Origin: Selaginella moellendorffii
Taxonomy: Eukaryota > Plantae > Lycopodiophyta
Length of the DNA stretch: 64,000 bases
Assembly: GCF_000143415.4 (NCBI RefSeq)
Contig: NW_003314276.1
Location: 106,766 to 170,765, forward strand
Direction: 5' to 3'
The position numbers and the translations under genes are program-made. This document shows positions 7,819 to 40,097 of the stretch, piece after piece (position 1 is the stretch's first letter; each line of letters opens with the position of its first letter). The notes below the pieces were generated by a model, which saw only the letters and a program-made list of their open reading frames with translations, had not been told where the DNA came from and ran no database searches.

Positions 7819-10800
7819 TGTTATGATCTAGCGTGAAAAGACAAAAGTCTATTCTCCCTAGACTACACTATACTTCCTCTTGAGGTTCCTCACCACCCAA
7901 CCACCCCGGAGCTACCTCAAAAGCTCCATTGTGCCGCCACTCCACTATAAGCCCTAAGGTAGGTTATGTTCCTTACCCTAACATGCCTTAATATACCCTT
8001 GAGCTTTCCTTTGACTGACATTGAACACATGGTTAAAGCTGGTACCTAACAATTTTTCCCCTCCCAATGAAAACCTTGTCCCAAGGACTAGTTGTACCGG
8101 TGATCACCCTTTCTGGTGAACCTTGCTCAAGCTGTTGGTCCATCTTCTAGAGCTATATACATCAAGGAGGCATTGGGCTCTTCATTCCAAAATAGTACAC
8201 CTTTCAACTAGTTGATATAAATACTGGATGAATTTTCACCCCAGCTGTTAGCCATATCTAATAAGCTGCCTTACAATGCGCTACCGATGAGAAAGTTTAT
8301 CACTCTTCTCATTCTGCAAAGGAAATAAGGTGTTCTGCCACTCACTTGATGGAAAGATCACTTACATGAAGACAAGATCACTCATTTTATATTCCTAGAA
8401 TTAGCAATGCTCATTAGCAAACTTCTCTACTCTATCATGAGCTACTTGCAAATTCTATTTGCATACCACCAAAATCTCATCAAATTTTATGGTCAGATCA
8501 ACTGCCTCGAAATCAAACTTATCTTGAACATCCTTACTCAAATGCAATCCCAACTCCACTGCTATTCAAAGATGCCTTCCAAACATAGCAAAGTAAGGAC
8601 TTAGCTTAGTTCTACAATGTTAGCTATTATTATAAGTAAATTGCACCAATGGAAGATATAAATCCCATTGTCTCTACCTTTGACTAATGCTATAGTGTAA
8701 GATACCCTTTACCACCAAATTCACATACTCAATTTTTCCATCTGTCTAAAGATGATCTTCATTCGAGAGTTTCAAAGTCACTTGTATAGCATTTGCAAAG
8801 CTCTTCTAAAATCCACTAGTGAACTTTAAATCTTAATCACTAATGATGTCCTCTGGCAAACCAAATTAGGAAAAACCTTCTCCAAGTAAACTATAGCCAA
8901 GTCTAAGGCAGTGACAGTCTTCCAAAGAGCCAACAACCACACATACTTTATCAATTAATCCATTATGACCCATACTTGTTTTTTCTTTGCCTCTATGTTT
9001 GTGGCAAACAAGTGATGAAGTCCATAGAGATACTACACCAACGTCTCTGAGGAATAGGTAAAGGTTGCAAAAATCCCCCTGGCTTCTCCCATGGCATCTT
9101 TACTTGCTGACAAAGCTTGCATGATTTATAATACTTAAGGATATCAGCCTTTATATTCCTCCAATAAAAATTGCACTTAATCAACTCATACGTCTTCTTT
9201 CCCCCAAAATGACCGGCCTCTAAACAATCATGATAGTGGAATAAAACTTGAGTAATTAATGCATCCACCTATGGCAAATATACATAGCCATTGTAGTAGA
9301 GCACACTCAACCAACTACCCAAACTCACTGACCACCTTATGTGTTTGTAATGCTGTCACATAATGAATACAAAATAAAGCATTTGCAACCACATTTAATT
9401 TTCCCAGACGATGCTCAATAGGAAACTCCCCAAACTCCATAATTTTGACCATCTGACAAGCTTGCCTAGTGTTCAACTCCTTCTATATGAAAAGATACAC
9501 AAGAGATTTATAATCTGTCGACACCATAAACATTGCACCATAAAGATAATGCTAGCATGTCTATAAAGCATGAACAATAGAGAGTAACTCTTGCTCATAT
9601 GTAAGATAGTGTTACTTTACGGGATTCAAAATTTAACTCTTATATGCAATAAGCTGTCCCTCTTGCATGAGAACTCCTCCCAATCCATAACCACTTGCAT
9701 CACATGTCAAGGTTTTGATGGATCAACAACTAGAGCCTCACTCAACAACCATTTTAATGCCACAAAACTCTTCTTATGTGGCTTCTTCCACTCAAATGGC
9801 ACATTCTTGAGCAACAACCGTATTAAAGGAATAGCTACCTTCACAAACTTGTACTAGAAACGTTGATAGTAACTAGCCATACCAAGGAAGCTACATAACT
9901 CAGTCACTTGAAGTCAATGTACACCACAGTAGAAGTATTTAGGCATTATCTTCATGAGTTTCTGGAAATTTTCTTGATGATATTCTTGTTTTTAGAAAGA
10001 ATGTAGAGGAGAATAAGGTGCATTTGTGCAAGGTTCTTTTGTTACTATGTGACAGCAAACTTTATGCTAAGAAGAGCAAATGTGAGCTTGCAAAGTTGGA
10101 GGTGGAATAACTAGGCCATATTATGACATCTAAGGGTGTTAAGACGGATCCAAAGAAGGTGGCTGTAGTGGAGAATTCAACGGAGTAAATATGGCTGATA
10201 CATTTGTCAAACCAAATAGCATAATTATAAACTCAAAATGCCTGAAACTTGTGTTGAATGTTGTCTTAGAGATAGATGCATCATCTATTGCAATCTGATG
10301 ATATTCACTCCTCGTATTAATCTTGGTAAACACTTGCACTTCACTAAGTTTGTCTAAGATATCATCCACATATGGTATTAGCATTTTATCCTTCATTGTC
10401 TTCTTATTCAAGGCACGGTAGTCAATACACATCTGCATTGAACCATCCTTCTTCTTCACAAGCAATACTGGAGCACCAAACAGAGACTTACTTGGCTGAA
10501 TAAATCCAAACTCAAGTAGCTCCTTAACTTGTTCTTGAACTTCTTGCTCCTCTCCATAACTCAACCAAAGTGGACGGCAATAAATTAGCCACATCCTTGG
10601 CTCCAACGTAATCTCATGCTCCACATCTTGTAATGGAAGCAACCCATGAGGAAGCTTAGATGGAAAAACATCGGAAAACTTGTCAATTACATCCCATACT
10701 ACTGCTTTTCCCCCACATATGCCTTGTCCCCCAAATCACAAACAAACAACAAATAACTCAAAAGTGCTTTTCCATTATGACAAACCCGCTTCAAAGATGT

Positions 10801-11667: not shown

Positions 11668-12902
11668 TACTTTTTCTTGCCAGATGGACAATACACGTTG
11701 GAGAAATTTTGAATGGAAAGAAATTGGATTCTGACTGCATTCTTTATAAGGCTCCTCTTTCTTGATGTTTAACAAATCTTTAACAGCAGGAAGTTAAGAG
11801 GTGGTGGACAGCACTCTGCCTCCCTTTCCTTCTGTGTGACTTGTTTATTTTTATTTTTATTTGTTTCGTTTTTCCTTTTTTCACTCTAGGCATCCAGTAA
11901 AATTGAATTTCTAGGCAACTGCTATTGAACAAACATTGATGGGCTCGCTTCTTCTTCATTTTTAGCGGTGGCCATAAATATGTCCATTTTTAAGACAAAA
12001 GAAGTACAATGAAGCATTTAAGAAGAAAAGAAATCAAAGAACAAGGAAGACGACGTTTGAGTTAACTTTGTGCTTTGGAGAGCTTGAAGCTTCTTACTTT
12101 GAGAATGGACTGGATTGGCTCCTCTCACTGAGAAGTACGGAGGAGGTAGCTCCTTGTGCGGGCTAGGAAAATTCTAAGTTACCGTGGTGACAGTTTTTGC
12201 TAGCACATACCGATTCTTGTGTCAAAGAGCTATCGCCCCAGCGTTGCAAGAAGAAAAGTGGATTATCACCTCATGTTCGCAGCATATACTGTTCAGCAAA
12301 AGAAAAATGGAAACGTACTTAGAACGTTCTGGCTAATGGTCCTGTGTAGAGGTTTAAAATGGGCGTAAGCACACCAGGTCAAAGCCCTCACCGTGCTCAG
12401 ATCTCGATCACCCTTGCTCGTCGCACTGTTCCCAAGCCAATCCTCTCCCAGCCCTAGCTCCCCCTTTTCTTGCCCCTGCCGCTGCATCCCAAGAACTCCC
12501 ATTGCCCGATCCTCTAACAAACCCATTCTTCCTGCCATGTCGGATTCACTTGTGCCCATGTCATCGTCCACATGTGCCGCTTCGCTTGGCTCATTGTTGA
12601 CCGCTACAGCACGGTCTGTTTTGAATTAGTGGTTCGCACATCTTTATTGTGCGTTCCGGATTTGTTTTGACGGCTAAGATTATAAACAAACTCCTCCGTT
12701 CATACTATTCGATTTGCGGTTTCTGGTCGCGTGGCAACTCATCAATCTCTCAAGGCAAAAGAAGGCCTGAAAGTAAATGTACACAATTTTTACTGAAAAA
12801 TGAAAGTCATGTTGAAAATGTATTGACCGTTGATTGGAGGAGCTCGAGGGAGACGCATCCGCTTGTATATGCCCTAATGTTAGGTTAATCTTCAATTTAG
12901 CA

Positions 12903-15368
12903 ATGTCAATACTTCCTGTCGCGCTTTTGCTGTTATGGCATTCAGCCATTTTTGGTTCAGGAAAACATTTCACTGCTAACTCGCTTGCCGCAGCTCGAAT
13001 CACTGATGCCGTTTTGTTTCTTAATGAACTCGACCCAAGTGTTCTGGATGAAGAATGCCGAGGGCAGCTCCAAACAATACAGGTTTGATACAAAAACAAT
13101 CCAAACATCTTTTGCTTTCAGCTTGGCCTTCTTAGGTCAACCGAAGCCTTGCAAGCAGGCGAGAACAACGATGCAATCGGAGAGATAGGTGTGGCAGAAG
13201 CAAGCCTGGACACATGCCTTTTGACTATGAGAAAATTGAAATCTCCTGAAGCACGCAGGGCTCGCTCTAGCCTTCGAAAAGTTGGTCTAAGCGTCTCGAC
13301 TGCTGATCAATTGATACAGATATCCAATGAAATTCACACTTTGAGACACCCTCCTGAAGCATCCCCGGTGCCTTTAAACACCCGACCGAAATTTGCAATA
13401 AGCCAAGACCCCCCACATCCAAGTATGTCAAAAATTCCTACAGCAGCGGATATTTTTAAAATACCACCAAAATCTGGATCTCCTCAAACTAATGAAAAGG
13501 TCGTTTCAACTATGCCGGTCTCATCAACGCCTTTCAAAACGGGCGTGGTAGAACAACACACTCCAAGCTTGTATTCGTCATCTAATAGCCCGAAGTTCAC
13601 AACAGCAGACGATACAGATCCACCAACAGACTCAAGCCACATGAAGACAAGTTTGCAAAATGGCCCCCAGTTTTCAACCTCAGGTGATTACATCTCTAAC
13701 AACTGACACTAAATTACACTTTCAATGTTGTCAGACTCGGTCTTTCGGCCCAATACTACTGTTCCAAATTCAGCCATATATCTTTCTGGGCTAACTCCAA
13801 CGACTGCTTTACGACAGTCAGGGGAACCTTTGTCGTCAATTCTAGTTGACTTCTGCTCAAACCATGTAGACAGGAAAGGAAACAACGTTATCATGCATTT
13901 GGACAAAGCTTGTGGTATGTGGCTAATTTCACCTGATTTGGCCTCGCTGAGGACTTTAAAATGCAGGAGCAAAGTTTCATTCTGCAGACATGTTTACTTC
14001 AGGGGTGTTCTCTGCCTGGATACGAACTGCAGTAAAATCAGTTGGTGTTAGCAGCAGTTTTTATGTATACTGTGACTGGTGATTTATAGCGCTTATACTA
14101 ATGCCTGAATACATGCAGATAACCTCTAATGACCACACACCAGATGCAATTAGCTTCGAATTTTATGGAAATCAACCAAAAAGGCTAACAACAAGCTATA
14201 CAGTGCAAGGAATATCCGATAACAACAAACAGACTTTTGCAGTTTCTTTTGATACATCTCTTAAATTTCACAAGTACACCATCAAATGGGATACCGAAGG
14301 CATAATGTAAGGTATCTTCTTGTGTTTCTGTGAGTCATATTAAATATTAATGGCAGGTGGCTCGTGGATGACTTGCTATTTCGAGCAATTGCAAAGACAA
14401 GTGGCAAGCCTTATCCTGAAAAGCCAGGAGGTCTATACGGGCTGATTTGGGATGCCTCCCATGCTGGTTTAGCTGGCACAATCGATTGGCAGAACAGTCC
14501 TTTCACCATCTACTACACCGATATTCTTGTTTCGTCGCCTCTGCTTTCTGGAACATGGAGGTTACCACCTCAAACGACAATACCGTCTGAATCTATCCCT
14601 GCACCAATGCGTCCCCTCGTGATTGATTATTGTGGATCTAATGTGGAGGTCACAGACACTGATATTGAAATAAAACTCGACGTCCAGCCAAAATGCGGTT
14701 CGTGAATTTTTTGTTAGTTATCTTCTAAAATTTCTTCATGTTACTAGGTGGTAGAGTTCGATCTGTTTCTAGGTATCTTGAAGGAGCATTCACTGCCCGA
14801 GTAAAATGCTCTGCAGGCGACACGAGTGGTCTCGTCTCAAGCTTTTACGTATGTTTTATACAGCTTTAGTTGCTTCTATGTTTAAAAATTTTAGTATTTT
14901 GGCAGTTATCATCTCTTGAAGGAAATGACGATGCTGACGAGATTATCTTTGAATGGCTGGGCTTTAACAAGCATGTTGTTCAAACCAATTTTCGTGTGAA
15001 CGGTCGTGCTGCTAACGACGAGGTCATCGATTTGAACTTTGATTGTTCACTGGGCTTCCACAAATACACAATTAGATACAGCAAACAACACATCCAGTTA
15101 AGGTTCTTTGTTTAAGCTGATCTTTGGTTAATCTTTCTCTATTCTTTTTGGCAGATGGGTTGTTGATGAACGTCTTTTGAGGACTGTAACCTTTTCACAG
15201 CAGTCATTGCTTGCAGGGACACCTTATCCTGTGAAACCCATGTATGTCTATTCGTCAGTGTGGAACGGCTCAGATGTGAACAATGGAAAGTGGGCTGGAA
15301 CGTGGCATGGCACTGGTTTGCCTTATACAGTTCTATTCAGCGATATAACTATAACATCCTCAGAGTGA
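12903..15368 (+). CDS. Secreted PMEI-like + Pro/Ser/Thr linker + tandem EG16/XTH-like GH16 protein (684 aa). Exons 12903-13082, 13122-13683, 13735-13914, 13967-14064, 14119-14306, 14357-14697, 14748-14848, 14906-15096, 15155-15368
   Basis: All 8 introns are GT..AG (39-58 nt), and the exons sum to 2055 nt in one open frame. N-terminus MSILPVALLLLWHSAIFG is signal-peptide-like. The helical domain has EC-x39-C ending LDTC. GH16 motifs: SSFY|ITSNDHTPDAISFEFYG...FHKYTIKW...PEKP and GDTSGLVSSFY|LSSLEGNDDADEIIFEWLG...VQTN...FDCSLGFHKY...PVKPMYVYSSVW. An additional in-frame 39-nt intron at 12955-12993 is possible. Confidence 0.88.
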
Positions 15369-15765
15369 TTGGAAATCTGTGCCAAAATAAGCATACCATC
15401 CAAGGTAGAATCCAATGAGAAACTATCTTTTTGCATTTTATTGCATCTTATTTCTCCTCCTCAATTGCCTTTATAATCACACCATTTCTGCAATAGCGAG
15501 CTTCTATATTACATTACAAGCCTCAGCACTTTTCTTGGTATAACCTTCTTCCCGTTTTCTTTTGCTTTATTGAACGTGAAGGCACCCGTTTTTCCCTGGT
15601 GTCCTTTTTGCGTGTTTTCGTCAAAACACTTTTATCACTGCTATGACAAGTTTTAGCTTTCCATTTGTACGTTTTTTTCTGCTAAAACTCTTGATGAGTT
15701 TGAAGATAACAAACCTTTAAATTAATTTTTCTCATTCTAGAATTGAATGTTAGCATCCTTCCATA

Positions 15766-16198
15766 TTATCCGGATTTCTTTAAGTATGCTATTAAATCGG
15801 CCCTGTCTTGAGGTTTCTTTAATCCAGGAAAAACCATCTTGTTCCCTGGCATAAACTGCAATATTTTAAATTCAGAACCTTTATAATTTTCAAACAGCTT
15901 TTCTGACCTTCTTGGGATTCAAAAGATAGTCATATAACGTATCGTCCTTCCAGGTAACCTTCGCATTCCTGTTTGCCTGAGAGAAAGAAAAACCAGGAGC
16001 TGTCCCAGAAACTCGCCCAACAACTCCGTTGAGATTTGGGCCTACAAATTACGCAAAGTTAACTGCAGTGGTTTTCAGATGGGTACCTTGTTTGTGGCCA
16101 CCCCCCTTCTCAATCGTGTGACAAGCAGAACATTTGGTCTTAAACAGCTTTTCTCCACTCGCTGCATTCCCGGCTGGGGCATCCTTAAAAGTTGCCAT
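15766..16198 (-). CDS. CYTC: Mitochondrial cytochrome c (111 aa). Exons 16198-16087, 16041-15908, 15855-15766
   Basis: [43 protein letters not shown]...[44 protein letters not shown]. CxxCH heme motif and Met80 ligand present; GT-AG introns of 45 and 52 nt. Confidence 0.97.
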
Positions 16199-21026: not shown

Positions 21027-21629
21027 GTTGAGGAAGATTTGCGAAGCACAAAGGCAAAACATAAAGACTTTCAGAAGCAAGTTGTAAGAATCTCAAGAGA
21101 ACTGAGTTTTACAACCAAACACGTTTTATCGGCCCTTTACTAAACCGGCCATAGTCTATTGTTTAGCAAGATTGGCCAAAGTTAATGTTATAAGCCTCAT
21201 TATAATAAGAATCAAGCAGTGTCTACCTACTACCTTCTAAATCTCCTTCAAAATCTTCAAAATCTGTGCATACTTGCACACATCTTGGATAGGAGAAATC
21301 CCAACAGATTGCAATGCAGTCCCGGCATGCTGCAAATTTGGAGAGCCAAGTGCTGAATTTCCTACAAAATAAAGAGTAGGATCTTGAAAGGCTTCTTGAA
21401 TGTTCTTTCCTTGCTGCTCTATGGTTATCTAGCATGTTAGATGAAAGTCTGTAAGAATTCACCAGCAATCGTCCAGTCTTGAGCATGTTGCTACCAACTC
21501 TAAAGTCATGTACAGTTGACCAGCTTCTAGCTTTGTATGAGCACTGGGTCGTGGTGCAGGGATTTATCTGGGGAATCAACTCCTTCGATAATGGGGTGTG
21601 AACTCGGCAATGTAAACTTGGCTTTCCAT
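21027..21629 (+). repeat. Left arm of ~600-bp inverted duplication (partner 24144-24736)
   Basis: Near-identical reverse complement; the ORF track gives the same peptide at 21223-21783(-) and 24287-24526(+). Confidence 0.95.
21440..21612 (+). pseudogene. PGIC: Cytosolic glucose-6-phosphate isomerase C-terminal fragment
   Basis: [47 protein letters not shown] matches PGI GNRPS...GQLLA(I/L)YEH...WGINSFDQWGVELGK. Frameshifted. Confidence 0.85.
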
Positions 21630-22439
21630 TAGCAGTGAAGGTTATATAAAATTTAAAGAAAAAGTACTTATAATGGCAGCCTCCAAAGACACACATAGTT
21701 GGCTGAGTTCTTAGAATCTGGTGATGCTTGCAGGCTTCTCTAAACTCAAGATAAGGGAGATCACGATTCATGAGAGAAAACACTAAAAGTGTACCTGATA
21801 GTTACTTGCTGTAATCAGCGTGAATCTCATACCTTCTTGGAAACTCTGTAAATCATAGTTTCCAGCAAGCTCCTGATGCATTGTATTGCTGTGCAAACAG
21901 GACTTAGTTAAAAAATAAATGAAGACCTTATTTTTAACAACCTTATTGTCTTGTGCCAGAAGTGAGACAAATTAAATGCTAGACTGCAACTCTTCTTGAT
22001 GATGCTGCTGTTCTCAACATTTGGTCCATGGTCATAAAAGCTATGCATGTCCTCCAAAGACCTGTGATGAGAAACATTTGGGACTTACAAACAGCCTCTA
22101 CAATGTACTTGGCAAGCCTGCCTTTGAGTATCTTCTTGTCTTTGAGTTTCATCCTGTTGAGGCAGTGACTTCAAAGAAGGATTCGCTCCTTGTGATAAGT
22201 CAATAAGTGACAGGGACAAATTAGAATAGTGGAGGCATGAGAATGCATAAGGTATCATATTGTATGAGGTACAATTCAGTAAAGTACTTTTTTCTTTTAT
22301 AACTACAGAAGTTTTGAAACTCTTACAGAATAGAAGTCTCGTGGTCTTGGATGTGGCAAGTAAGAAACTTTGCTGTTGGGATCCAAGGCAGTCCACCTCA
22401 AACCCCAGATAAAGGAATAATGGCACAAATAATAGATCT

Positions 22440-22675
22440 TTACCTGTAATAACGAAGTAATGGACGACAATGAAGATTTGAAGCTTGGCAAGTTTGTAAG
22501 TTCGATTTCCCATCCCAAAGGGTGTGAACGTGAATGGAGATACTCCATATTTCTAGTTAAAAATCCCAGCCAGAGTTACAGAGCATGGGTGAGAATCTCG
22601 TACCTCCCAGCTGGATTGAACTTTTCCGGATCAGGGTGGATCCATATGTACTTGTCTTAGCCACGCTTCCAAATC
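22440..22675 (-). pseudogene. Cytochrome P450 CYP88/KAO-like C-terminal fragment
   Basis: EAWLRQVHMDP..PDPEKFNP (PERF-type region), then FTPFGMGNRT-(heme Cys lost)-KLAKLQIFIVVHYF. Confidence 0.7.
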
Positions 22676-22809
22676 ACTTGAACATCACTTGAGAGAAGGA
22701 GACTCACTATTAAACTCGAGGTCTAACAAGGCTCTTCTAAAGACCATTGGGGATATTTTTTGCAAGTTGCAGTGTTTCATTGAGAGTAACTGAGAATCAA
22801 ACGAAACAA

Positions 22810-23540
22810 ATCTCGCCATGTAAGATTGTACTGCCTGAGCAAAACCAGGCTTGTACGAGAAGAGCAGCCCACAGAAAAGCTTCCCATCGATGGACGCTTC
22901 TAATATGTATCTGTAGTTGAATATGTCGCTTACTCTAGCCTCGAACATCTTCTCGCCTAGCAGCTGAAGATGAGCTTGAAACTCTGTAGCATGAGTTTGA
23001 CAGGGAAAAATTGGAGAGGTCCAAGTTTTTCTGCAGATACCTTTGTGAGATGAAACCAAGCTCTTGTCCGCATCCCGTTGCTTGTCTAGCACGAATGGCG
23101 TGGCACGATACTCTTGCCACCTTCTCTTAAGTTCCTTACGCATGGATAGCTTTGGTTCTGATGGATCTTTCCCCCTCAGCATCTCTTCACAGAAAAACGG
23201 CAACCATATTGTCAAGAATGGCAGCAATGTCATTTAAAGAAGAAGCCAACCTGTGTCAAGGAAATACATGTCATCCAGAGCTTCAAGCTCTTCGTTATAT
23301 CCCCCATAGAAGAATCATATGCCTCACTCTGCGTCCACGGAATCTCCTGCAAGGGAGAAACGTGGAGAAGGCCCGGGACCAGAGGGATTCGAAGTTGCCC
23401 AAACACCAGTTGCTACAAAATACGTAAAAGCCCCATGAGAGACTCACGTACTTTCCATGGCTGATTGTTGTGTGCCTGGCTCTTAGCATCAGCTCCGCAC
23501 CAGTCGTCTTTACCTCCCGCCATGCCATTGTTTCTGGAAA
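22810..23540 (-). pseudogene. Kelch-repeat protein 3' half (plant family with C-terminal FEARV...IDGKLF.GLLF motif)
   Basis: ETMAWREVKTTGAELMLRARHTT; GPGPSPRFSLAGDSVDAE*GI*FFYGG...LDDMYFLDT|; EPKLSMRKELKRR; GEKMFEARVSDIFNYRYILEASIDGKLFCGLLFSYK. In-frame stops; introns retained. Confidence 0.75.
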
Positions 23541-24143
23541 CGCAAATGAATTCGCAAGTTTAAAACCAGCACAATGTATGTACCTGTGTCCAGAATATAA
23601 AATCATTTTACACACGTTTGTAAAGCATTTCAAATTTATAATAGGCATCTGGGCTGTAAATCTCGCCTGAAACTTCTGTCCAAGGGATTCTCAAAGGTTG
23701 ATGTAAACGCAACCTGCGTGTTTCCTGGCTCTCACCATTTTCCAAAGAGGAAGTCATTTCGTTCTGAAACCATGTACTATAAAGATAACCCTAACCAACT
23801 TTTATCTTGCAATACTTTACTTTGTCACAAATATCTTAAATCATTTTCCTTTGTTACATTGGGCAATAAGATATTATTCAGCAAGTTGGGTTGTGCTGCA
23901 GCACAGATTGCTTGTGTTCTTTAGCCGTGATGTACCTGCAAAGCTCAAGAGCTCACTCATTATCAAAAAGTTATGAAGTCATGCTCTGTCCAAGTTCTCT
24001 CACCTTTAAATAACGGTTGAGCAGCATTGTGAACTATGATTAGATCATTCTATGGGCTTTCGTTTGTTTGTGAAGCATTCATCTGTATGCAAACTCGGGA
24101 TGCAAGCACCTGAAAAGATTGGATTTTCAATTAGTTTCAGATG

Positions 24144-32318: not shown

Positions 32319-32916
32319 TGTGAGACACAAATTCTAGAGCCCCAAAAGTGGAGCCGAAGGGTGCCATGTGGTAGTGATTGAAGCAGAAGCCAAACAAGCA
32401 TAACACGTTTGGACTAAAAGCTCCGACTTGAAAGGTCGAGAGCGAGAGTGAAACTCCCCAAAGAAGGGCTTGAGGAACAAGCTCAAAGCGAGCAATAAGT
32501 GAGTTTCTAGAAAAACGACACAAAAGGACCAACATATGACACTAGAAGTGCAGAGATGGAGTCCGAGATGGAGTTTGAGATGGATCTGAGATGGAGTCCG
32601 AGATGGACCCGAGATGGAGTCTGAGATGGACTCGAGATGGAGTCTGAGTTGGACCCAAGATGGAGTCTGAGATAGACCCAAGATGGAGTTTGAGATGGAG
32701 TCCGAGTTGGACCCGAGATGGAGTCCGAGATGACCCCGAGATGGAGTCCAAGATGGAGTCCGAATTGGACCCGAGATTGAGTCCGAGATGGACTTAACAT
32801 GGACCCAAGATGGAGTCCAAGGACAAGGCCGAGACTGAGACCGAGACCGAGTCCAAGTTCAAGTCTGAGTTTGAGACCAAGAATGAGACCGAATCCAAGT
32901 CCAAGTCCAAGTCTAA

Positions 32917-34737
32917 TGTGAGACACAAAATCCCTAGGCCCCAAAGTGGAGCTGGAAAGGGTGCCACGTGGTAGTGGCCGAAGTGAAAGCCAAACGAGCG
33001 TAACACGTTTGGACTAAAAGCTCCGACTTAAAAGGTCGAGAGCGGGAGTGGAACTCCCAACAAAGTGCTCAAGGAGCAAGCACAAAGCAAGCAATAAGCA
33101 AGGCTCCAAAAAGGGACCCAAAAAGGACCAACACATGACACGTGGAAGTGTCCGAGATGGAGTCCGAGACGGACCCTAGTTGGAGTCCGAGATGGACCCA
33201 AAATGGAGTCCGATATGGAGTCTGAAGTGGAGTCCGAGATGGAGTCCGATATGGAGCCCGAGATGGACCTGAAGTGGAGTCTGAGGTGGACAAAGACAGA
33301 GTCCGAGATGGACCCGAGATGGAGTCTGAGATGGACCCGAGATGGAGTCCGAGATGTAGCCGAGGTGGACCAAGACGGAGTCCGAGATGGACCCGAGATG
33401 GAGTCCGAGATGGAGTCTGAGATGGACCCGAGATGGAGTCCGAGGTGGAGTCCGAGGTGGACCGAGACGGAGTCCGAGATGGACCCGAGATGGAGTCCGA
33501 GATGGACCGAGACGGAGTACGAGATGGAGTCCGAGATGGACCGAGATGAAGTCCGAGATGGAATCCGAGATGGAGTCCGAGAAGGACCCGAGATGGAGTC
33601 CGAGGTCGAGATCGAGACCGGGACCGAGACCGGGACCGAGACCGAGATCGGGACCAAGACCGGGACCGAGACCGAGGCCAAGGCTGAGACCGAGCCCGAG
33701 CCCGAGTCCGAGTCCGAGTCCGAGTCCGAGTCCGAGTCCGAGTCCGAGTTCAAGTCTGAGAGGGTGAAAGCCCAAAGCGTTCGTCTCCCAGACCCTGGGG
33801 GGTTTGGTGAGCTCCAACAGTATAGTAAGGGGGAGGACTGCAGTGGAGCCAGTTTGGCCTAGGAAGGCCAGACCCAGTGTTGGGTGATGAACTGACCACT
33901 GGGAAGTCTAAGACTAGAGTGAATACGGACCGACAAGTGGGGTAGCTTGGTGAAGTGTTCAAGATCCGGCTCTAGTTCCCCCGGGAGATCGACTGGCCGA
34001 TGCTCCCAGTCCAAGTGTGGGTGGCACTACCTACTTGGATACCAGGCGTGGCTCAACGAAACCTCGCTCTAAGCCCATGGCTAGAGCACCTAAAGGTGAA
34101 AGGCGGGGAGAGTACCTAGGTGGCTCGCGTAAGGCCACGGTGTTCCGAAATGTTGTCCCAAAGGCCTAGACTGTGGAAAGGAAGAGGAGCAGTCCTCTGG
34201 GGTAGTGACCAAGGACACAGTCGTGTGGTGAGGAAGTCCCAGAGGACCATGGGACTTAGTGGTTGGGCTTGTGGGCCTCGATCCAGTGGCAGTGTTGGCA
34301 AACACGGCCAGGGGCAGAAAGGGACTTGGTAGGAACTGACAAAGGGACTTTGGGGAAGGCAATTCCCCAGGTCTGTGGGCATCCCAAGGATGCTAAGGAG
34401 TGGATCTAGGATGACCACTCGTGGATAGATGGCCCAGTCTTGGAGAGACGGGATGGTGATGCAAGTGGTATTGGACCACTAGTGCAGCAAAGGTGAATGA
34501 GCATGGCCTTAGCGTAACGGGCCGAGATGTCAGTGGTACCTTTGGGTGTCGGTCTTGGGACCGGACACGTGGAGCACTTGGACCAGGTGTAAGTGTTGAG
34601 TGGCATGGATGCCATTCTTGGGGCTAGCAAGTCCCAAGTCCTGAATTGGACTGATGGAGGTTGTGAATGAGACTCCTCTAAGTGGTCGGAGGTGTAGTTA
34701 AGTGACTAAAGTAGAATGGAAAATTTCGTCACTTACA
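32917..34737 (+). mobile_element. Family C solo LTR (1821 bp) with 5-bp TSD TCTAA
   Basis: TG...CA termini; TCTAA at 32912-32916 and 34738-34742. Confidence 0.92.
33150..33760 (+). repeat. Compound minisatellite (GAGATGGAGTCC/GAGATGGACCC grading into GAGACC/GAGTCC) inside family C LTR
   Basis: The same array occurs at ~30000-30440(-), 32550-32915, 44330-44955, 50720-51320(-) and 56385-56520. Confidence 0.95.
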
Positions 34738-35662
34738 TCTAAGTCTGAGCCTGAGTGTGAGTCCGAGTCTGACTCTGAGGGTGAAAGCCCAAAGCATTCA
34801 TCTCCCAGACCCTGGGGGTTTGGTGAGCCCCAAAAGTATAGTAGGGGGAGGACCCCAGTGTAGCCAGTTTGGCCAGGAAAGGCTAGTATGAACTAGAAAA
34901 GCTATGCTTACGTGTTGGGTGATGATATATCCACTGAGGAATCCAAAGCTAGAATGAATATGGATAGACAACCGGGGTGGCTTGGTGAAGTGTTCAATAG
35001 TTGGCTTTAGCTCCCATGGGAAATCAAATGGTCGATACTCCCAATCCAAGCGTGGGTGGCACTACCTACTTAAATACATAGTGTGGCTCAATGAAACATT
35101 GCTCTAGCCCCATGGCTAGAGCACTCAAATGCGGAAGGTGGGGAGAGCACCCATGAAGCTTGCGTAGGGCCATGGTATTTTGAAATGTTGTCCCAAAGTC
35201 CCAGATTGTGGAAAGGAAGAGGACCAATCCTCTAGTTTAGTGACCAAGGATACAGTCACATGATGAGAAAGTCCTAGAGGACAGTGGGATTTAGTGATCG
35301 GGCCTATGAGCCTTGACCCAATGGCAATGTTGACGAACATGGCCATGGACAGAAAGGGACTTGGTGGGAACAGTAAAAGGGATATTGGGGAATGTTGTTC
35401 CCCATGTCTGCAGGCATCCTAAGGATGTTAAGGAGTGGATTTAGGATGATCACTCATGGACAGATGGCCCAGTCCTTGAGAGACGGGACTGCGATGCAAG
35501 TGGTGTTAGACCACCGGTGTGACCAAGGTGAAGGGGCATGGCCTTGGCGTAACAGGCTGATATGTCGATGGTACCTTGGGGTGTCAGTCTTGGGATTGGA
35601 CACGTAGAGCACTGGGACCAAGTGCAAAGGATAGGTGGCATGGATGCCATTCTTGGGGCTAG

Positions 35663-38600
35663 TGTTAGGCACCAGCTTTGACTATGTGGTCAACGTCGGT
35701 CAAAGGGAGGCTCAAGGGTATATTAAGGCATGTTAGGGTAAAGGACTTAACCTACCCTAGGGCTCACAGTGGAGCGGCGGCGCAGTGGGGCTTTTGAGGT
35801 AGCTTGGGGGTGGTTGGGTGGTGAGGAACCTCAAGAGGTGGTGTAGAAGAGTCTAGGGCGACTAGATCTCTGTCTTTTTGCGCCAGATCATAACATTGGT
35901 ATCAGAGGAGTTGGTTGTGATGGCCGACCAAGCTGAACGCTGGAATGCTATTGTCGATGGTGGTGCCGACGATGGTGCCAACGAAGTTGCGGAGATTTGG
36001 ACCATTCAAGATGTTGTTCATGAGCTGCGAGCCCTTAATAAAAATCAGCAAGAGATGCAAGACGAGATGCATGGCATGATGGACACCATGCGTGGGCGTG
36101 TTGAGGCACTCGAGGCTGGACGGGGTAGTGCTTCAAGTAAGCCTTCTTTGGTAGATCGACTCAAGATTCCAACTTTTTCCGGTGATGGTGGTGTGGACGA
36201 GTGTCTCGCTGGGCTAGCCAATGTGAAGAAGTTCTTGGCTACTAGAGGAACTCCAGATGCAGAGGCTTTAGTGGCTATTCCGATGGTTTTGCGTGATGCG
36301 GGTCTTCAATGGTGGAATTGGCTTGAGGAGTCCCTTGTTGCGGATAAGAAACCACCAGTGTCTACCATGGATGAATTTGAGGCTGCTTTCCGTTTACGTT
36401 TTGCCCCTCATTACAATGTGGAGAATGCTCGTACGGAACTTTGACATTTCCAGCAAGGGAAAATGACACTTAGGGACTATATTGAGAAGCTTATTCGCTT
36501 GATTAGTCGTGTTCCAACGAAGGATCCAGATCAGAACAAGTCCTACTTCATTGATGGCCTACATAGTGAGAGCATGCGGCAACACTTGCGTCATTCTCAG
36601 CCTACAAAGTGTTTGGAGGAGCTCTTTGATGCAGCTCGTCGACTTGACAATGACAAGCACAAGTCTTGCAAGCGCTCGTGGAGTCCTGTCGAGAATCGTC
36701 GTGATGATCGCCATGGACACTAGGATGGGAACAAGCATCACAAGTTGAAATCGGTGGTGACTACTTCAGATGCAAAGGGGTCCAAGAAGCAGAAGTTCTT
36801 TGTGAAGAATTATAGATAGGGTTGTTATCATTACGGCGAACTTGGACACTACAAGGCTGATTGTCCGTAGTTGAAGAACAAGCAGCAGGACAAGAAGAAT
36901 GGCCAATCTTCTTCTCACGGTAAGTCAGATACTAAAAAGTTGCAAAATTTGCAGCGTGAGGATGAGGAGAACGACCATTCCAGTCGGAGGAAGTGACTTT
37001 CGATCGTTGCTCGTCAACTCAACTGTGTGTGGAACAAGATGGAGCTCGAGGATACGCGTGAATCAGCTTTAATGCTGGAGGGTGTGTTCTGTGGCGATCC
37101 AGTGCGGATTTTACTGGATAGTGGGAGCGATGACAACTTTGTTTCGGCAGTGTTTGTTGCGGAGCATGGCCTGAACACACGCGGAGTTCTTCCATACACA
37201 GTGGAAGGTGCAGCTACCTCTGCTCAGCATTTTGATGCTTGTGTCAAGGGGCTGGAAGTCTTGGTTAGCAAAACCACAGTTGTGGAGACTTTTTATCTCG
37301 CGGATATCCATCGTGTGGATCTCATCTTTGGGATGCCATGGTTGGTGAAGGTGGATCTAGAGATAAAGTGGAGTATTAACGCCAATATCTAGGCCATATT
37401 GTGACATCTCAGGGTGTCAAGACGGATCCAAGGAAGGTGGCTGTGGTGGAAAACTGGCCTACACTGACTACAGTGGCCGAGTTGCACAGTTTTCTTGGTA
37501 TGGCTAGTTACTACCGACATTTCCAACATAAGTTTGCAGAGGTGGCTATTCCTTTGATGCGGTTGTTACGCAAGAATGTGCCATTCGAGTGGAAGAAGCC
37601 ACAAGAGGAGAGTTTTGTGGCGCTGAAGCGATTGTTGAGCGAGACTCCAGTGCTTCGCATTGCTGATCCATCGAAACCTTACGAGGTGACATGCGATGCA
37701 AGTGGTTATGCACTGGGAGGAGTTCTCATGCAAGAGGGACAGCCTATTGCATATGAGAGTCGAACTTTGAATTCTGCGGAGCAACGCTATTCCACATATA
37801 AGCAAGAGTTACTCTCTATTGTTCATGCTTTGCGGACGTGGCAGCACTATGTTTATCATGCAGTGTTCGTGGTGTTAACAGATCACAAACCACTTGTGTA
37901 TCTTTTCACACAGAAGGAGTTGAACACTACGCAAGCTCGTTGGATAGTCAAACTCATGGAGTTTGGGGAGTTTCCTATTGAGCATCGTCCGGGAAAATCA
38001 AATGTGGTGGCAGATGCTTTATCTCGTGCTCGTCATGTGACGACATTATGAACACGATTTTGTCATCATTTGAGTAAGGTGGTCAGCGAGTTTAGGCAGT
38101 TGGTTGAGCATGCTCAGGCTCAGGATGCTGAGGTGGCCTCTTTGCGAGACCAGATGGAAGCCCCTTTCTCATTGGTGGATGGGATTCTCTACTACAATGG
38201 CCATGTATATTTGCCACGGGTGGATGCGTTAATTACTCAAGTTTTATTCCACTATCNNNNNNNNNNNNNNNNNNNNNNNNNNNNNNNNNNNNNNNNNNNN
38301 NNNNNNNNNNNNNNNNNNNNNNNNNNNNNNNNNNNNNNNNNNNNNNNNNNNNNNNNTATTGTAAATCATGCAAGCTTTGTCAGCGGGTTAAGGTGCCACG
38401 GGAGAAGCCGGGGGGACTTTTGCAACCTTTACCTATTCCTCATAGCCGTTGGTGTAGTATCTCTATAGACTTCATCACTTGTTTGCCACAACACAAAGGG
38501 CAAAAGGAGCAAGTATGGGTCATAGTGGATCGGTTGACGAAGTATGTGCGGTTGTTGGCTCTTCAGAAGACTGTCACTGCCTCAGACTTGGCTGCGGTTT

Positions 38601-39695
38601 ACTTGGAGAAGGTTTTTCCTGATTTTGGTTTGCCGGAGGATATAATTAGTGATCGAGATTCAAAGTTCACCAGTGGATTTTGGAAAAGCTTTGCAAAGGC
38701 TATGCAAGTGACTTTGAAACTCTCGGGTGGAGATCATCCTCAGACGGATGGGCAAACTGAGCGTGTGAATCAGGTGGTGGAGGATATGCTACGTTGTAGC
38801 ATTGGTCAAAGGCAAGGACAGTGGGATTTATATCTTCCGTTGGTGCAATTTGCTTACAACAATAGCCAACACAGTGGAACCAAGCTAAGTCCTTATTTTG
38901 CCATGTTTGGAAGGCATCCTCGAACAGCGGTGGAGTTGGGATTGCATTTGAGTAAGGACGTTCAAGATAAGCGTGATTCTGAGGCGACTGATTTGGCCAC
39001 AGAACTTAATGAGATTTTGGTGGTGTGCAAACGTAATTTGTAAGCAGCTCAAGATAGAGCGAAGAAGTTTGCCAATGAGCATCACCAATTCCGGGAATAT
39101 AAGGTGGGTGATCTCGTCTTTGTGCGAGTGATCTTTCCGTCAAGTGAGCGGCGGACCACCTTGGTGTCTTTACGGACAGGGAAGAGTGATAAACTTTCCC
39201 ATCGATATGCTGGTCCATATGAAGTGCTGGAGCGCATTAGTAAAGCGGCTTATCAGGTGCGGCTGCCAACTAGGGTGAAAATTCATCTGGTATTTTATGT
39301 CAGCTAGTTGAAAGGTGTACTATCTCGGAGTGACAGGCCCAATGCCTCCTTGATGTACACGGCTGTGGAAGATGGACCAGGAGCTTGAGTAGGGTTCCCC
39401 AGAAAGGGTGATCACCGGTACAACTCGTCCTTGGGACAAGGACTTTTTTGGGGGGGAAGAATTGTTAGGCGCCAGCTTTGACTACGTGGTCAACGTCGGT
39501 CAAAGGGAGGCTCAAGGGTATATTAAGGCATGTTAGGGTAAGGGACAAAACCTACCCTAGGGCTCACAGTGGAGCGGCGGCGCAGTGGAGCTTTTGAGGT
39601 AGCTCGAGGGTGGTTGGGTGGTGAGGAACCTCAAGAGGTGGCGTAGCATAGTCTAGGGCAACTAGATCTTTGTCTTTTTGCGTCGGATTATAATA
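35663..39695 (+). mobile_element. Ty3/Gypsy family A element with RT-core deletion: LTRs 35663-35895 and 39463-39695, PBS 35897-35907, gag-PR-(dRT)-RH-IN, PPT 39450-39461
   Basis: Two 233-bp LTRs with 17 mismatches by hand count. PBS TGGTATCAGAG (tRNA-iMet). LLDSGSDDNF (PR), CDASGYALGGVL (RH), SIDFITCLP / HPQTDGQTERVN / RYAGPYEV (IN). No chromodomain after the GPY motif. 100-N gap at 38257-38356. Confidence 0.95.
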
Positions 39696-39696
39696 T

Positions 39697-40097
39697 TGGT
39701 ATCAGAGAATTGGTTGCGATGGCCGACCAAGCTGAACGCTGGAATCCTATCATCGATGGTGGTGCCGACGGTGGTGCCGACGATGGTGCCGACGAAGCTG
39801 CGGAGATTTGGACCATTCAAGATTTGGTTCATGAGCTGCGGTCCCTTAATAAAAATCAACAAGAGATGAACGACGGTATGCATGGCATGATGGACACCAG
39901 GCGTGGGCGTGTTGAGGCACTCGAGGCTGGACGGGGTAGCGCTCCAAGTAAGCCTTCTTTGGTAGATCGACTCAAGATTCCAACCTTTTCCGGTGATGGT
40001 GGTGTGGACGAGTGTCTTCGTTGGCTAGCCAATGTGAAGAATATCTTGGCTGCTAGAGGACTCCAGATCCAGAGGTCTTAGTGGCTATTCCGATGGT
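39697..40097 (+). mobile_element. Second PBS and gag start of a tandem family A unit, truncated
   Basis: TGGTATCAGAG directly after the second LTR, then MADQAERWN...LKIPTFSGDGG, as at 35920. Confidence 0.9.

What the first reader, a model, noticed from the sequence alone, without database searches (positions are those of the whole stretch)
12903..15368. Novel-looking cell-wall protein: signal peptide + PMEI-like inhibitor domain + mucin-like linker + two tandem EG16/XTH GH16 domains
Seen: a clean 9-exon, 684-codon model. After a hydrophobic N-terminus comes VLDEECRGQLQTIQLGLLRSTEALQAGENNDAIGEIGVAEASLDTC...LRKVGLSVSTADQLI, then ~160 aa rich in Pro/Ser/Thr, then two GH16 domains without an XET C-terminal extension. 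Established: PMEI/invertase-inhibitor bundles have a C-x39-C-type second disulfide with an (S)AA...TC motif and are normally stand-alone or fused to pectin methylesterase. Characterised EG16 enzymes are single-domain and lack a signal peptide; XTHs carry one GH16 plus XET_C. I know of no PMEI-GH16-GH16 fusion. Inference: a secreted scaffold that could tie pectin (PME) or invertase regulation to xyloglucan or mixed-linkage glucan. The first PMEI Cys pair is absent, so that domain call is the weaker part.
Basis: partly seen in the sequence, partly recalled or inferred. Interest (0 to 1): 0.9.

Follow-up and report, generated by a model that had tools for sequence, protein, structure and literature searches.

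The report
Secreted PMEI-fold plus double GH16 protein
This Selaginella gene encodes a secreted cell-wall protein with a small helical domain that looks like a pectin-methylesterase inhibitor, a floppy linker, a dead glucanase-like domain and a second glucanase domain missing one catalytic residue. The layout is conserved from mosses to ferns, yet I found no description of it in the papers I could search.

Summary
Window 12903-15368 (+) holds a nine-exon, 686-codon gene of Selaginella moellendorffii (SELMODRAFT_411404, UniProt D8RHT7). All introns are GT..AG and 39-57 nt long.

- **Annotation error:** the GenBank model (663 aa) skips exon 4.
- **Architecture:** signal peptide, a 4-helix bundle with two invariant Cys, a ~140-aa linker (44% Pro/Ser/Thr), then two GH16 domains without XET_C. 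The closest solved structure is Vitis EG16.
- **Conservation:** Ceratodon, Physcomitrium, Sphagnum and Adiantum share the layout. In Ceratodon it is one uninterrupted ORF, so it is not a gene fusion artefact.
- **PMEI-like domain:** AlphaFold models of the N-terminal domain (pLDDT 91 and 82.5) have PMEI and invertase-inhibitor structures as their top 7-8 Foldseek hits. Pfam PMEI never reaches its threshold, and the first Cys pair is absent.
domain 1 lacks the catalytic nucleophile in all land-plant orthologues. Selaginella domain 2 uniquely reads DEIIFE instead of DEIDFE.
- **Selection:** haplotype dN/dS is 0.22 overall and about 0.11 in each GH16 domain, so the gene is under constraint.
- **Phylogeny:** it is a paralogue family distinct from canonical EG16, possibly the poorly described 'EG16-2'.

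Verdict: a new variant of a known kind, of moderate interest.

The parts
12903..15368 (+). Whole coding region. Nine exons: 12903-13082, 13122-13683, 13735-13914, 13967-14064, 14119-14306, 14357-14697, 14748-14848, 14906-15102, 15155-15368. 686 codons plus a stop at 15366-15368.
   Evidence: all introns are GT..AG, 39-57 nt, with an open frame; the frame is kept in the second haplotype; this is SELMODRAFT_411404.
12903..12959 (+). Predicted signal peptide (aa 1-19, MSILPVALLLLWHSAIFGS).
   Evidence: it is the most hydrophobic segment of the protein and no other TM-like segment exists; orthologues also begin with a hydrophobic leader. No SignalP tool was available, so the cleavage site is inferred.
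12960..13346 (+). N-terminal four-helix bundle with a PMEI / invertase-inhibitor-like fold (aa 20-135; spans intron 1). The conserved Cys pair is C52 (13056-13058) and C92 (13215-13217).
   Evidence: alignment A1 of 15 orthologues has two invariant Cys. AF2 gives pLDDT 90.9, pTM 0.80 and four helices. PMEI/CIF structures are the top Foldseek hits.
13347..13817 (+). Pro/Ser/Thr-rich linker (aa 136-275; spans intron 2). Probably disordered and O-glycosylated.
   Evidence: 44% P+S+T; linker length (25-137 aa) and composition vary among orthologues; both haplotype indels lie here; this region has the highest dN/dS (0.44).
13818..14558 (+). GH16 domain 1 (aa 276-470), catalytically dead. The motif DAISFE lies at 14143-14160, where the nucleophile Glu is Ala and the motif Asp is Ser.
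   Evidence: GH16 profile match; the nucleophile is absent in every land-plant orthologue; dN/dS is 0.11.
13967..14064 (+). Exon 4, missing from the deposited GenBank model. It encodes AKFHSADMFTSGVFSAWIRTAVKSVGVSSSFY, which forms GH16 beta-strands.
   Evidence: the peptide is homologous to the moss orthologues, and GH16 profile coverage is restored.
14559..15365 (+). GH16 domain 2 (aa 471-686), EG16-like, with no XET_C extension. The motif DEIIFE lies at 14936-14953; Ile564 (14945-14947) replaces the otherwise invariant Asp.
   Evidence: about 50% identity to VvEG16 in exon 8; it keeps 44 of 48 conserved columns, and the losses include Q560A and D564I; the second haplotype has the same motif.

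Best explanation
The gene encodes a secreted, modular cell-wall protein of an old streptophyte family that is a paralogue of canonical EG16.

**Shown**
- A signal peptide is followed by a disulfide-type four-helix bundle with the PMEI / invertase-inhibitor fold.
- A variable, disordered linker follows; in Selaginella it is rich in Pro/Ser/Thr.
- Next comes a GH16 jelly-roll that lost its catalytic nucleophile before the land-plant lineages sampled here diverged.
- The C-terminal domain is an EG16-type GH16 domain.

**Inferred mechanism**
- The dead domain 1 works as a glucan-binding module, much like a built-in carbohydrate-binding domain. It would hold the protein on mixed-linkage glucan, xyloglucan or cellulose-like chains.
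- Domain 2 is the endo-glucanase in the moss and fern orthologues, which have the canonical DEIDFE motif.
- In S. moellendorffii the motif Asp is Ile, so activity is probably strongly reduced or altered. The protein may act mainly as a wall-glycan binder.
- The PMEI-fold domain is a protein-interaction or regulatory module. The most economical model is a pro-domain-like partner of the GH16 part, by analogy with the PMEI-like pro domain of type-I pectin methylesterases.
For: **Gene and architecture**
- Nine clean exons give one frame.
- The Ceratodon orthologue is a single uninterrupted 1845-nt genomic ORF holding all modules. Uninterrupted ORFs also occur on contigs L003 and L004.
- The architecture recurs in Sphagnum, Ceratodon, Physcomitrium and Adiantum.

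**GH16 domains**
- Pfam GH16 matches twice, and the best PDB relatives are VvEG16.
- In the tree, land-plant domain 1 (98/90) and domain 2 (97/95) each form a clade that follows the species groups. Both are separate from the canonical EG16 clade (100/97).
- Domain 1 lacks the nucleophile in all land-plant members. It still keeps 28 of 48 conserved columns, including aromatic residues Y340, Y393, W404, Y430 and W434.
- Selaginella domain 2 keeps 44 of 48 columns but has D564I and Q560A, in both haplotypes.

**Selection**
- Haplotype dN/dS is 0.22 overall, 0.11 for domain 1 and 0.12 for domain 2.

**N-terminal domain**
- AF2 models are confident: pLDDT 90.9 and pTM 0.80 for Selaginella, and 82.5 and 0.77 for Sphagnum.
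- The top Foldseek PDB hits are AtPMEI1, kiwi PMEI and tobacco invertase inhibitor, with best E-values of 4.7e-3 and 2.8e-3.
- The invariant C-x38/39-C pair sits at the start of helix 2 and the end of helix 3.
- The three pro/PMEI motifs listed in PMC3741192 have ordered counterparts: (V)L-D/E-x-x-C, L-x-[ST]-C, and S-V-x-S-A-x-x-L-I.
- The pro-domain precedent is described in PMC3741192.
Against: - Every functional step is inference; no assay or expression data exist for this gene.
- Sequence evidence for PMEI homology is below threshold. There is no Pfam PMEI hit for the Selaginella protein at E<=1. The best hits in relatives are 22.9 bits (Mesotaenium) and E=0.006 (Adiantum), against a cut-off of 29 bits.
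- The family profile does not find PMEI among PDB sequences.
- Foldseek E-values are only about 1e-2 to 1e-3, and four-helix bundles are common.
- No conserved RRLL/RKLL-type processing motif lies between the helical domain and GH16. This weakens the pro-PME analogy.
- The effect of Asp-to-Ile on activity is inferred from the strict conservation of that Asp (25 of 25 active-type domains), not measured.
Confidence: 0.6

Rival explanations
1. The N-terminal domain is a true PMEI or invertase inhibitor acting in trans. The protein would tether a PME or invertase inhibitor to hemicellulose through its GH16 domains.
For: PMEI and CIF structures are the best structural matches for two orthologues. 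The protein appears to be secreted. The Cys pair is placed as in the second PMEI disulfide.
Against: The N-terminal helical hairpin and the first disulfide of PMEI/CIF are absent. Pfam PMEI stays below threshold. Sequence identity to PMEI structures is only 13-18%. Nothing here links the protein to PME or invertase.
Confidence: 0.15
2. The helical domain is an unrelated four-helix bundle, for example an oligomerisation or stalk module. Its resemblance to PMEI would then be convergent.
For: No significant sequence link exists. The profile search against PDB finds DesK and other helical proteins, not PMEI. hhalign to the Mesotaenium N-terminus, which has the best Pfam PMEI score, is not significant. 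Designed bundles and talin also appear among the Foldseek hits.
Against: Out of 350,542 chains, the few PMEI/CIF entries take the top 7-8 ranks for two models that share only 29% sequence identity. The conserved Cys pair and the motif order match the PMEI/pro consensus given in PMC3741192. Weak Pfam PMEI hits recur in independent lineages.
Confidence: 0.2
3. The locus is a decaying or mis-joined gene in Selaginella: a pseudogene, or two neighbouring genes merged by the reader.
For: The catalytic motif of domain 2 is damaged (DEIIFE). The terminal branches are long (0.58 and 0.65).
Against: Both haplotypes have intact 686-codon frames, with only in-frame indels. dN/dS is 0.22 overall and about 0.11 in each GH16 domain. 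All splice sites are canonical. The architecture is the same within a single moss ORF.
Confidence: 0.04

Closest known systems
Canonical plant EG16 endo-glucanases (VvEG16 PDB 5sv8/5dze, PtEG16, PpEG16)
   Same: They share the GH16 jelly-roll without the XET_C extension. VvEG16 is the best PDB sequence match for both domains. Domain 2 is 41% identical to the liverwort EG16 P0066. The LSSLEG...DEI.FE.LG strand is shared.
   Different: According to PMC9887094 and PMC8711696, canonical EG16 proteins are about 200-aa single-domain proteins without a signal peptide, encoded by single-copy genes. This protein has a signal peptide, an N-terminal helical domain, a linker and two GH16 domains. Both domains fall outside the canonical EG16 clade. 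Domain 1 lacks the nucleophile, and Selaginella domain 2 lacks the motif Asp.
EG16-2 (Behar et al. 2018; discussed in PMC8711696 and bioRxiv 10.1101/835561)
   Same: EG16-2 proteins are EG16-like GH16 proteins of streptophyte algae, mostly with signal peptides (PMC8711696). From my memory of the Behar 2018 abstract, which I could not read here, they are characterised by an N-terminal extension. Zygnematophyte relatives of this gene exist.
   Different: The papers I could read treat EG16-2 as charophycean and biochemically uncharacterised. They do not describe a PMEI-fold domain, a dead GH16 domain, or land-plant members. I had no Klebsormidium EG16-2 sequences, so clade membership is untested.
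XTH (GH16_20) xyloglucan endotransglucosylase/hydrolases
   Same: Both are secreted GH16 proteins of the plant wall with an ExDxE-type strand.
   Different: There is no XET_C (PF06955) extension. PDB matches to XET are much weaker (1umz, E about 5e-3) than those to EG16.
PMEI / cell-wall invertase inhibitor family (PF04043; PDB 1x8z, 1xg2_B, 1rj1) and the PMEI-like pro domain of type-I PMEs
   Same: Both have an up-down four-helix bundle, and PMEI/CIF are the top structural matches. A Cys pair joins helices 2 and 3. The domain sits N-terminal to a wall-polysaccharide enzyme domain, as in pro-PME (PMC3741192).
   Different: The N-terminal hairpin with the first disulfide is missing. The Pfam score is below threshold. 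The domain is fused to GH16 rather than CE8 PME. No conserved basic processing motif is present.
Catalytically inactive GH16 domains used as glucan receptors (insect betaGRP/GNBP; from my own knowledge, and cited as ref. 24 in PMC6827312)
   Same: Both are GH16 folds that have lost catalytic residues yet are conserved, presumably for binding.
   Different: They belong to a different GH16 lineage (laminarinase-like) and serve animal immunity. Here the dead domain sits in tandem with an EG16-type domain.

Membership tests
GH16 (PF00722) | Significant match to the GH16 profile (jelly-roll domain) | tested here: met
   Two domains match. The deposited protein scores E=1.2e-54 in two stretches. Colinear hits lie in exons 4-6 and 7-9. 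With my own EG16 HMM, domain 1 scores 113 bits and domain 2 scores 185 bits.
GH16 (PF00722) | Catalytic ExDxE motif (nucleophile Glu, Asp, acid/base Glu) | tested here: not met
   Domain 1 reads A-I-S-F-E, with no nucleophile and no Asp. Domain 2 reads E-I-I-F-E, with the Asp replaced by Ile while both Glu residues are kept.
Canonical EG16 | Falls in the EG16 clade | tested here: not met
   Canonical EG16 (Calypogeia plus grasses) forms its own clade at 100/97. Land-plant domain 1 and domain 2 form separate clades. The tree had few canonical EG16 sequences and no XTH sequences.
Canonical EG16 | Single GH16 domain of about 200 aa with no signal peptide | tested here: not met
   The protein is 686 aa, with a hydrophobic leader and two GH16 domains. 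The defining feature is taken from PMC9887094.
Canonical EG16 | No XET_C C-terminal extension | tested here: met
   The protein ends 20-odd residues after the last GH16 strand, and there is no PF06955 hit.
XTH (GH16_20) | XET_C (PF06955) extension | tested here: not met
   No hit at E<=1.
PMEI / invertase inhibitor (PF04043) | Profile match above the gathering score (29 bits) | tested here: not met
   There is no hit for the Selaginella protein at E<=1 or for its isolated domain at E<=10. The Adiantum orthologues score E=0.006-0.05, and the Mesotaenium relative scores 22.9 bits.
PMEI / invertase inhibitor (PF04043) | Up-down four-helix bundle fold | tested here: met
   AF2 predicts four helices at pLDDT 90.9. 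PMEI/CIF structures are the top Foldseek hits for two orthologues, with TMq up to 0.73. These are predicted structures, not experimental ones.
PMEI / invertase inhibitor (PF04043) | Four conserved Cys forming two disulfides, the first in an N-terminal helical hairpin | tested here: not met
   Only two Cys are invariant (C52 and C92). No N-terminal hairpin or first pair is present.
PMEI / invertase inhibitor (PF04043) | Inhibits PME or invertase | not testable with these tools
   This needs a biochemical assay.
EG16-2 | Clusters with Klebsormidium and other charophyte EG16-2 sequences | not tested
   No reference EG16-2 sequences could be fetched, and Behar et al. 2018 is not held.
EG16-2 | Signal peptide present | tested here: met
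   A hydrophobic N-terminal leader occurs here and in the orthologues. The feature is taken from PMC8711696.

The most novel reading that the evidence does not exclude
The helical domain may be a deep, previously unrecognised branch of the PMEI/pro-domain superfamily that was already fused to EG16-type GH16 domains before land plants arose. Closterium proteins show the same C-x39-C spacing, and a Mesotaenium relative has a near-threshold PMEI hit.

Under this reading the domain acts as an intramolecular pro-domain or inhibitor of a glucanase, giving a 'pro-EG16' parallel to pro-PME. PMEI-type inhibitors would then have started as general pro-domains of wall enzymes. The dead GH16 domain would be a purpose-built hemicellulose-binding module.
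Probability: 0.2. Interest if true: 0.75.

Novelty: new variant of a known kind. Interest (0 to 1): 0.55.

Why it matters
According to the literature I could read, EG16 enzymes are puzzling. They are conserved, cell-wall localised without a signal peptide, single-copy, and show almost no knock-out phenotype.

This family shows that non-seed plants also carry a classically secreted EG16-type paralogue. It has a built-in pseudo-enzyme domain and a PMEI-fold domain that current domain libraries do not recognise.

If the helical domain is a real PMEI relative, three things follow:
- It widens the PMEI/pro-domain superfamily beyond pectin and invertase biology.
- It bears on the open question of where the pro/PMEI domain came from (raised in PMC3741192).
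- It offers tractable test systems in Physcomitrium (PHYPA_012418) and Ceratodon.

The Selaginella Asp-to-Ile change is a natural experiment in turning a glucanase into a probable binder.

Tried and rejected
- **Pfam on single exons** found GH16 only. The PMEI region is split by intron 1, so I repeated the search on the deposited full protein. There was still no PMEI hit.
- **phmmer of the helical part against PDB sequences** gave only chance helical matches. This held for Selaginella, for the Adiantum and Mesotaenium N-termini, and for the 15-sequence profile.
- **hhalign of the land-plant profile against algal N-termini** (Mesotaenium P0020, Closterium P0059, Mesotaenium P0014) was not significant, although the Cys residues fall in register.
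- **The word-indexed homologue search with the full protein** was swamped by the low-complexity linker and returned 2 hits. With domain 2 alone it found only 2 canonical EG16 proteins. The tree therefore lacks XTH, VvEG16 and Klebsormidium EG16-2.
- **Literature.** Behar et al. 2018 and McGregor et al. 2017 are not held. No paper mentions SELMODRAFT_411404, and the supplements of PMC8711696 are not held.
- **A conserved RRLL/RKLL-type processing motif** between the helical domain and GH16 was sought but not found.
- **Pseudogene and gene-fusion artefact readings** were rejected.
- **Genomic neighbours are uninformative.** They are a cytochrome c gene, an unknown 435-aa gene and retroelements.
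Full report
**Observation**

Reading window 12500-15800 and assembling exons by hand gives a nine-exon gene on the + strand. The exons are 12903-13082, 13122-13683, 13735-13914, 13967-14064, 14119-14306, 14357-14697, 14748-14848, 14906-15102 and 15155-15368. All eight introns are GT..AG and 39-57 nt long.

**Identity of the locus**

A library-wide HMMER search with exon 6 returned P0001. By exact look-up this is Selaginella moellendorffii SELMODRAFT_411404 / EFJ27978.1 / UniProt D8RHT7, named only 'GH16 domain-containing protein'. The second haplotype allele is SELMODRAFT_431920 (P0026).

The deposited 663-aa model skips exon 4 and starts exon 5 30 nt early.
- Exon 4 encodes GAKFHSADMFTSGVFSAWIRTAVKSVGVSSSFY, which is matched almost position for position in the moss proteins.
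- Including it extends GH16 profile coverage of domain 1 from positions 87-208 (77 bits) to 6-208 (113 bits).

**Is it one gene, and is it alive?**

The same module order occurs in Sphagnum, Ceratodon, Physcomitrium (PHYPA_012418), two Adiantum species and several unnamed assemblies. The Diphasiastrum hit (P0002) is a 309-aa fragment covering only the GH16 part. In Ceratodon purpureus the whole protein is a single uninterrupted 1845-nt genomic ORF. Two short contigs also carry it as one ORF.

The two S. moellendorffii haplotypes differ at 35 of 2058 exon sites and by two in-frame 3-nt indels, both in the linker. Both keep the 686-codon frame. Nei-Gojobori dN/dS by region:

| Region | dN/dS |
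|---|---|
| Whole protein | 0.22 |
| GH16 domain 1 | 0.11 |
| GH16 domain 2 | 0.12 |
| Helical part | 0.32 |
| Linker | 0.44 |

The counts are small, but the pattern is that of a constrained gene, not a pseudogene.

**GH16 domains**

Pfam GH16 matches twice and XET_C does not match. The closest solved structures by sequence are Vitis vinifera EG16 (5sv8, 5dze-g), well ahead of bacterial licheninases and poplar XET. Pairwise identities:

| Pair | Identity |
|---|---|
| Domain 2 vs liverwort EG16 P0066 | 41% |
| Domain 1 vs P0066 | 32% |
| Domain 1 vs domain 2 | 31% |

A maximum-likelihood tree of 49 domains shows the following:
- Land-plant domain 1 forms one clade (98/90) and land-plant domain 2 forms another (97/95). 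Each follows the moss, lycophyte and fern groups.
- Canonical single-domain EG16 (Calypogeia), together with the grass proteins, forms a separate clade (100/97).
- The grass two-domain EG16 proteins are recent internal duplications within that canonical clade.
- Zygnematophyte proteins (Spirogloea, Mesotaenium, Closterium) also have dead-plus-active tandems, so the duplication predates land plants.

**Catalytic residues**

The GH16 motif is ExDxE, with a nucleophile Glu and an acid/base Glu (PMC6572274, PMC6827312). Domain 1 reads DAISFE here and D-x-I-S-F-D/E in every land-plant orthologue, so the nucleophile is gone throughout. Domain 2 reads DEIDFE in every relative but DEIIFE in both Selaginella haplotypes. 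The codon is ATC rather than GAC, a two-base difference.

I compared 48 columns that are at least 90% conserved in 25 active-type domains:
- Selaginella domain 2 keeps 44. The four losses are Q560A, D564I, E588D and A654G.
- Domain 1 keeps 28, including several aromatic residues (Y340, Y393, W404, Y430, W434).

I read domain 1 as a long-standing pseudo-enzyme kept for binding. I read Selaginella domain 2 as a glucanase with a specifically damaged catalytic strand. The size of the activity loss is an inference.

**N-terminal domain**

Fifteen land-plant orthologues align over about 115 residues with two invariant Cys, C52 and C92 here, spaced x38-39. The AlphaFold2 results were:

| Model | pLDDT | pTM | Helices | PMEI/CIF among Foldseek PDB ranks | Best E-value | TM-score |
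|---|---|---|---|---|---|---|
| Selaginella aa 20-140 | 90.9 | 0.80 | four | 1-7 and 9 | 4.7e-3 | 0.73 |
| Sphagnum P0006 aa 30-172 | 82.5 | 0.77 | four long helices plus one short helix | 1-8 | 2.8e-3 | up to 0.64 |

- The Foldseek search covered 350,542 PDB chains.
- The PMEI/CIF hits are Arabidopsis PMEI1 (1x8z, 1x90, 1x91), tobacco cell-wall invertase inhibitor (2cj8, 1rj1) and kiwi PMEI from the PME complex (1xg2_B).
- The Sphagnum orthologue is 29% identical to the Selaginella domain, though both models used the same 15 sequences as the alignment.
- In the Selaginella model the two Cys lie about 20 residues either side of the helix 2-helix 3 turn. That placement fits a disulfide, as in the second PMEI disulfide.
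- The three motifs shared by PMEI and PME pro domains (PMC3741192) have ordered look-alikes here.

The sequence-level tests fail:
- Pfam PMEI does not hit the Selaginella protein. It reaches only E=0.006-0.05 in Adiantum and 22.9 bits (cut-off 29) in a Mesotaenium relative.
- The family profile does not find PMEI among PDB sequences.
- Links between the land-plant domain and the algal N-termini are not significant.
- The N-terminal hairpin and first disulfide of PMEI are absent.

'PMEI-like fold, possibly a remote homologue' is therefore supported. 'Member of PF04043' is not.

**Other parts**

- The leader MSILPVALLLLWHSAIFGS is the only strongly hydrophobic segment, and orthologues have comparable leaders. 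I had no SignalP tool.
- The linker (aa 136-275) is 44% Pro/Ser/Thr. In the orthologues where it could be delimited it is 25-96 aa; the moss linkers are acidic and the Adiantum ones Ser/Asn-rich. No conserved dibasic processing motif is present.

**Mechanism**

The most likely reading is a secreted wall protein that binds hemicellulosic or mixed-linkage glucan through the dead domain 1. It cuts glucan through domain 2 in the orthologues, and only weakly if at all in Selaginella. The PMEI-fold bundle would serve as a regulatory or pro-domain-like module.

The architecture is shown. Binding, activity and regulation are inferred. The rival readings are a trans-acting PME or invertase inhibitor, an unrelated helical module, and a pseudogene or mis-join. 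They are weighed in the Rival explanations section.

**Novelty**

The papers I could read describe EG16 as single-domain, single-copy and without a signal peptide (PMC9887094, bioRxiv 10.1101/835561). They describe EG16-2 as uncharacterised charophyte proteins with signal peptides (PMC8711696). None mentions this gene, a PMEI-fold domain or a dead GH16 partner.

Behar et al. 2018 is not held. From memory, its abstract says EG16-2 members have an N-terminal extension, so the family may already be catalogued there under that name. I therefore rate this as a new variant of a known kind, of moderate interest, not as a categorically new system.

Noticed in passing
window 13915-14118: The deposited GenBank/UniProt model (EFJ27978.1, D8RHT7; 663 aa) omits exon 4 (13967-14064) and uses an acceptor 30 nt upstream of exon 5. 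This deletes about 33 residues of GH16 strands and inserts 'ALILMPEYMQ'. The other haplotype's model (EFJ04967.1) has the same error.
   Followed up: yes
window ~15766-16198 (- strand): A 111-aa cytochrome c gene (Pfam Cytochrom_C) lies immediately downstream on the opposite strand. The second haplotype scaffold has the same arrangement.
   Followed up: partly
window ~21237-23648 (- strand): A called gene for a 435-aa product has no Pfam family on record.
   Followed up: no
window ~32900-45700: This looks like a Ty3/gypsy-type LTR retrotransposon. Gag/RT/integrase ORFs lie at 35878-39043, with an assembly gap (N-run) near 38.26 kb. Direct repeats of about 82-85% identity, spaced about 11.2 kb apart, flank it at about 32.9-35.5 kb and 44.1-45.7 kb. 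These repeats carry 12-nt-period microsatellite arrays, which produce the long 'GLGLGL/DSDSDS' ORFs in all frames.
   Followed up: partly
window 50847-51340; 10139-10642 (-); 57010-60307 (-): There is a further 12-nt-period repeat array with a 150-nt super-period. Additional reverse-transcriptase, integrase and gag fragments of other retroelements are also present.
   Followed up: no
related proteins P0012, P0041, P0053, P0055 (Paspalum, Miscanthus, Dichanthelium): Grass EG16 genes encode two tandem, fully canonical EG16 domains (both DEIDFE, or DEIDLE plus DEIDFE in Dichanthelium P0055) without a signal peptide. In the tree the Paspalum and Miscanthus domains (the two included) are recent internal duplications within the canonical EG16 clade. 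This sits oddly with the 'single-domain' description of EG16 in the literature I read.
   Followed up: partly
related proteins P0042 (Spirogloea), P0018/P0060 (Closterium): Some zygnematophyte dead-plus-active GH16 tandems carry a DUF642 (PF04862) domain at the N-terminus instead of the helical Cys-pair domain.
   Followed up: partly
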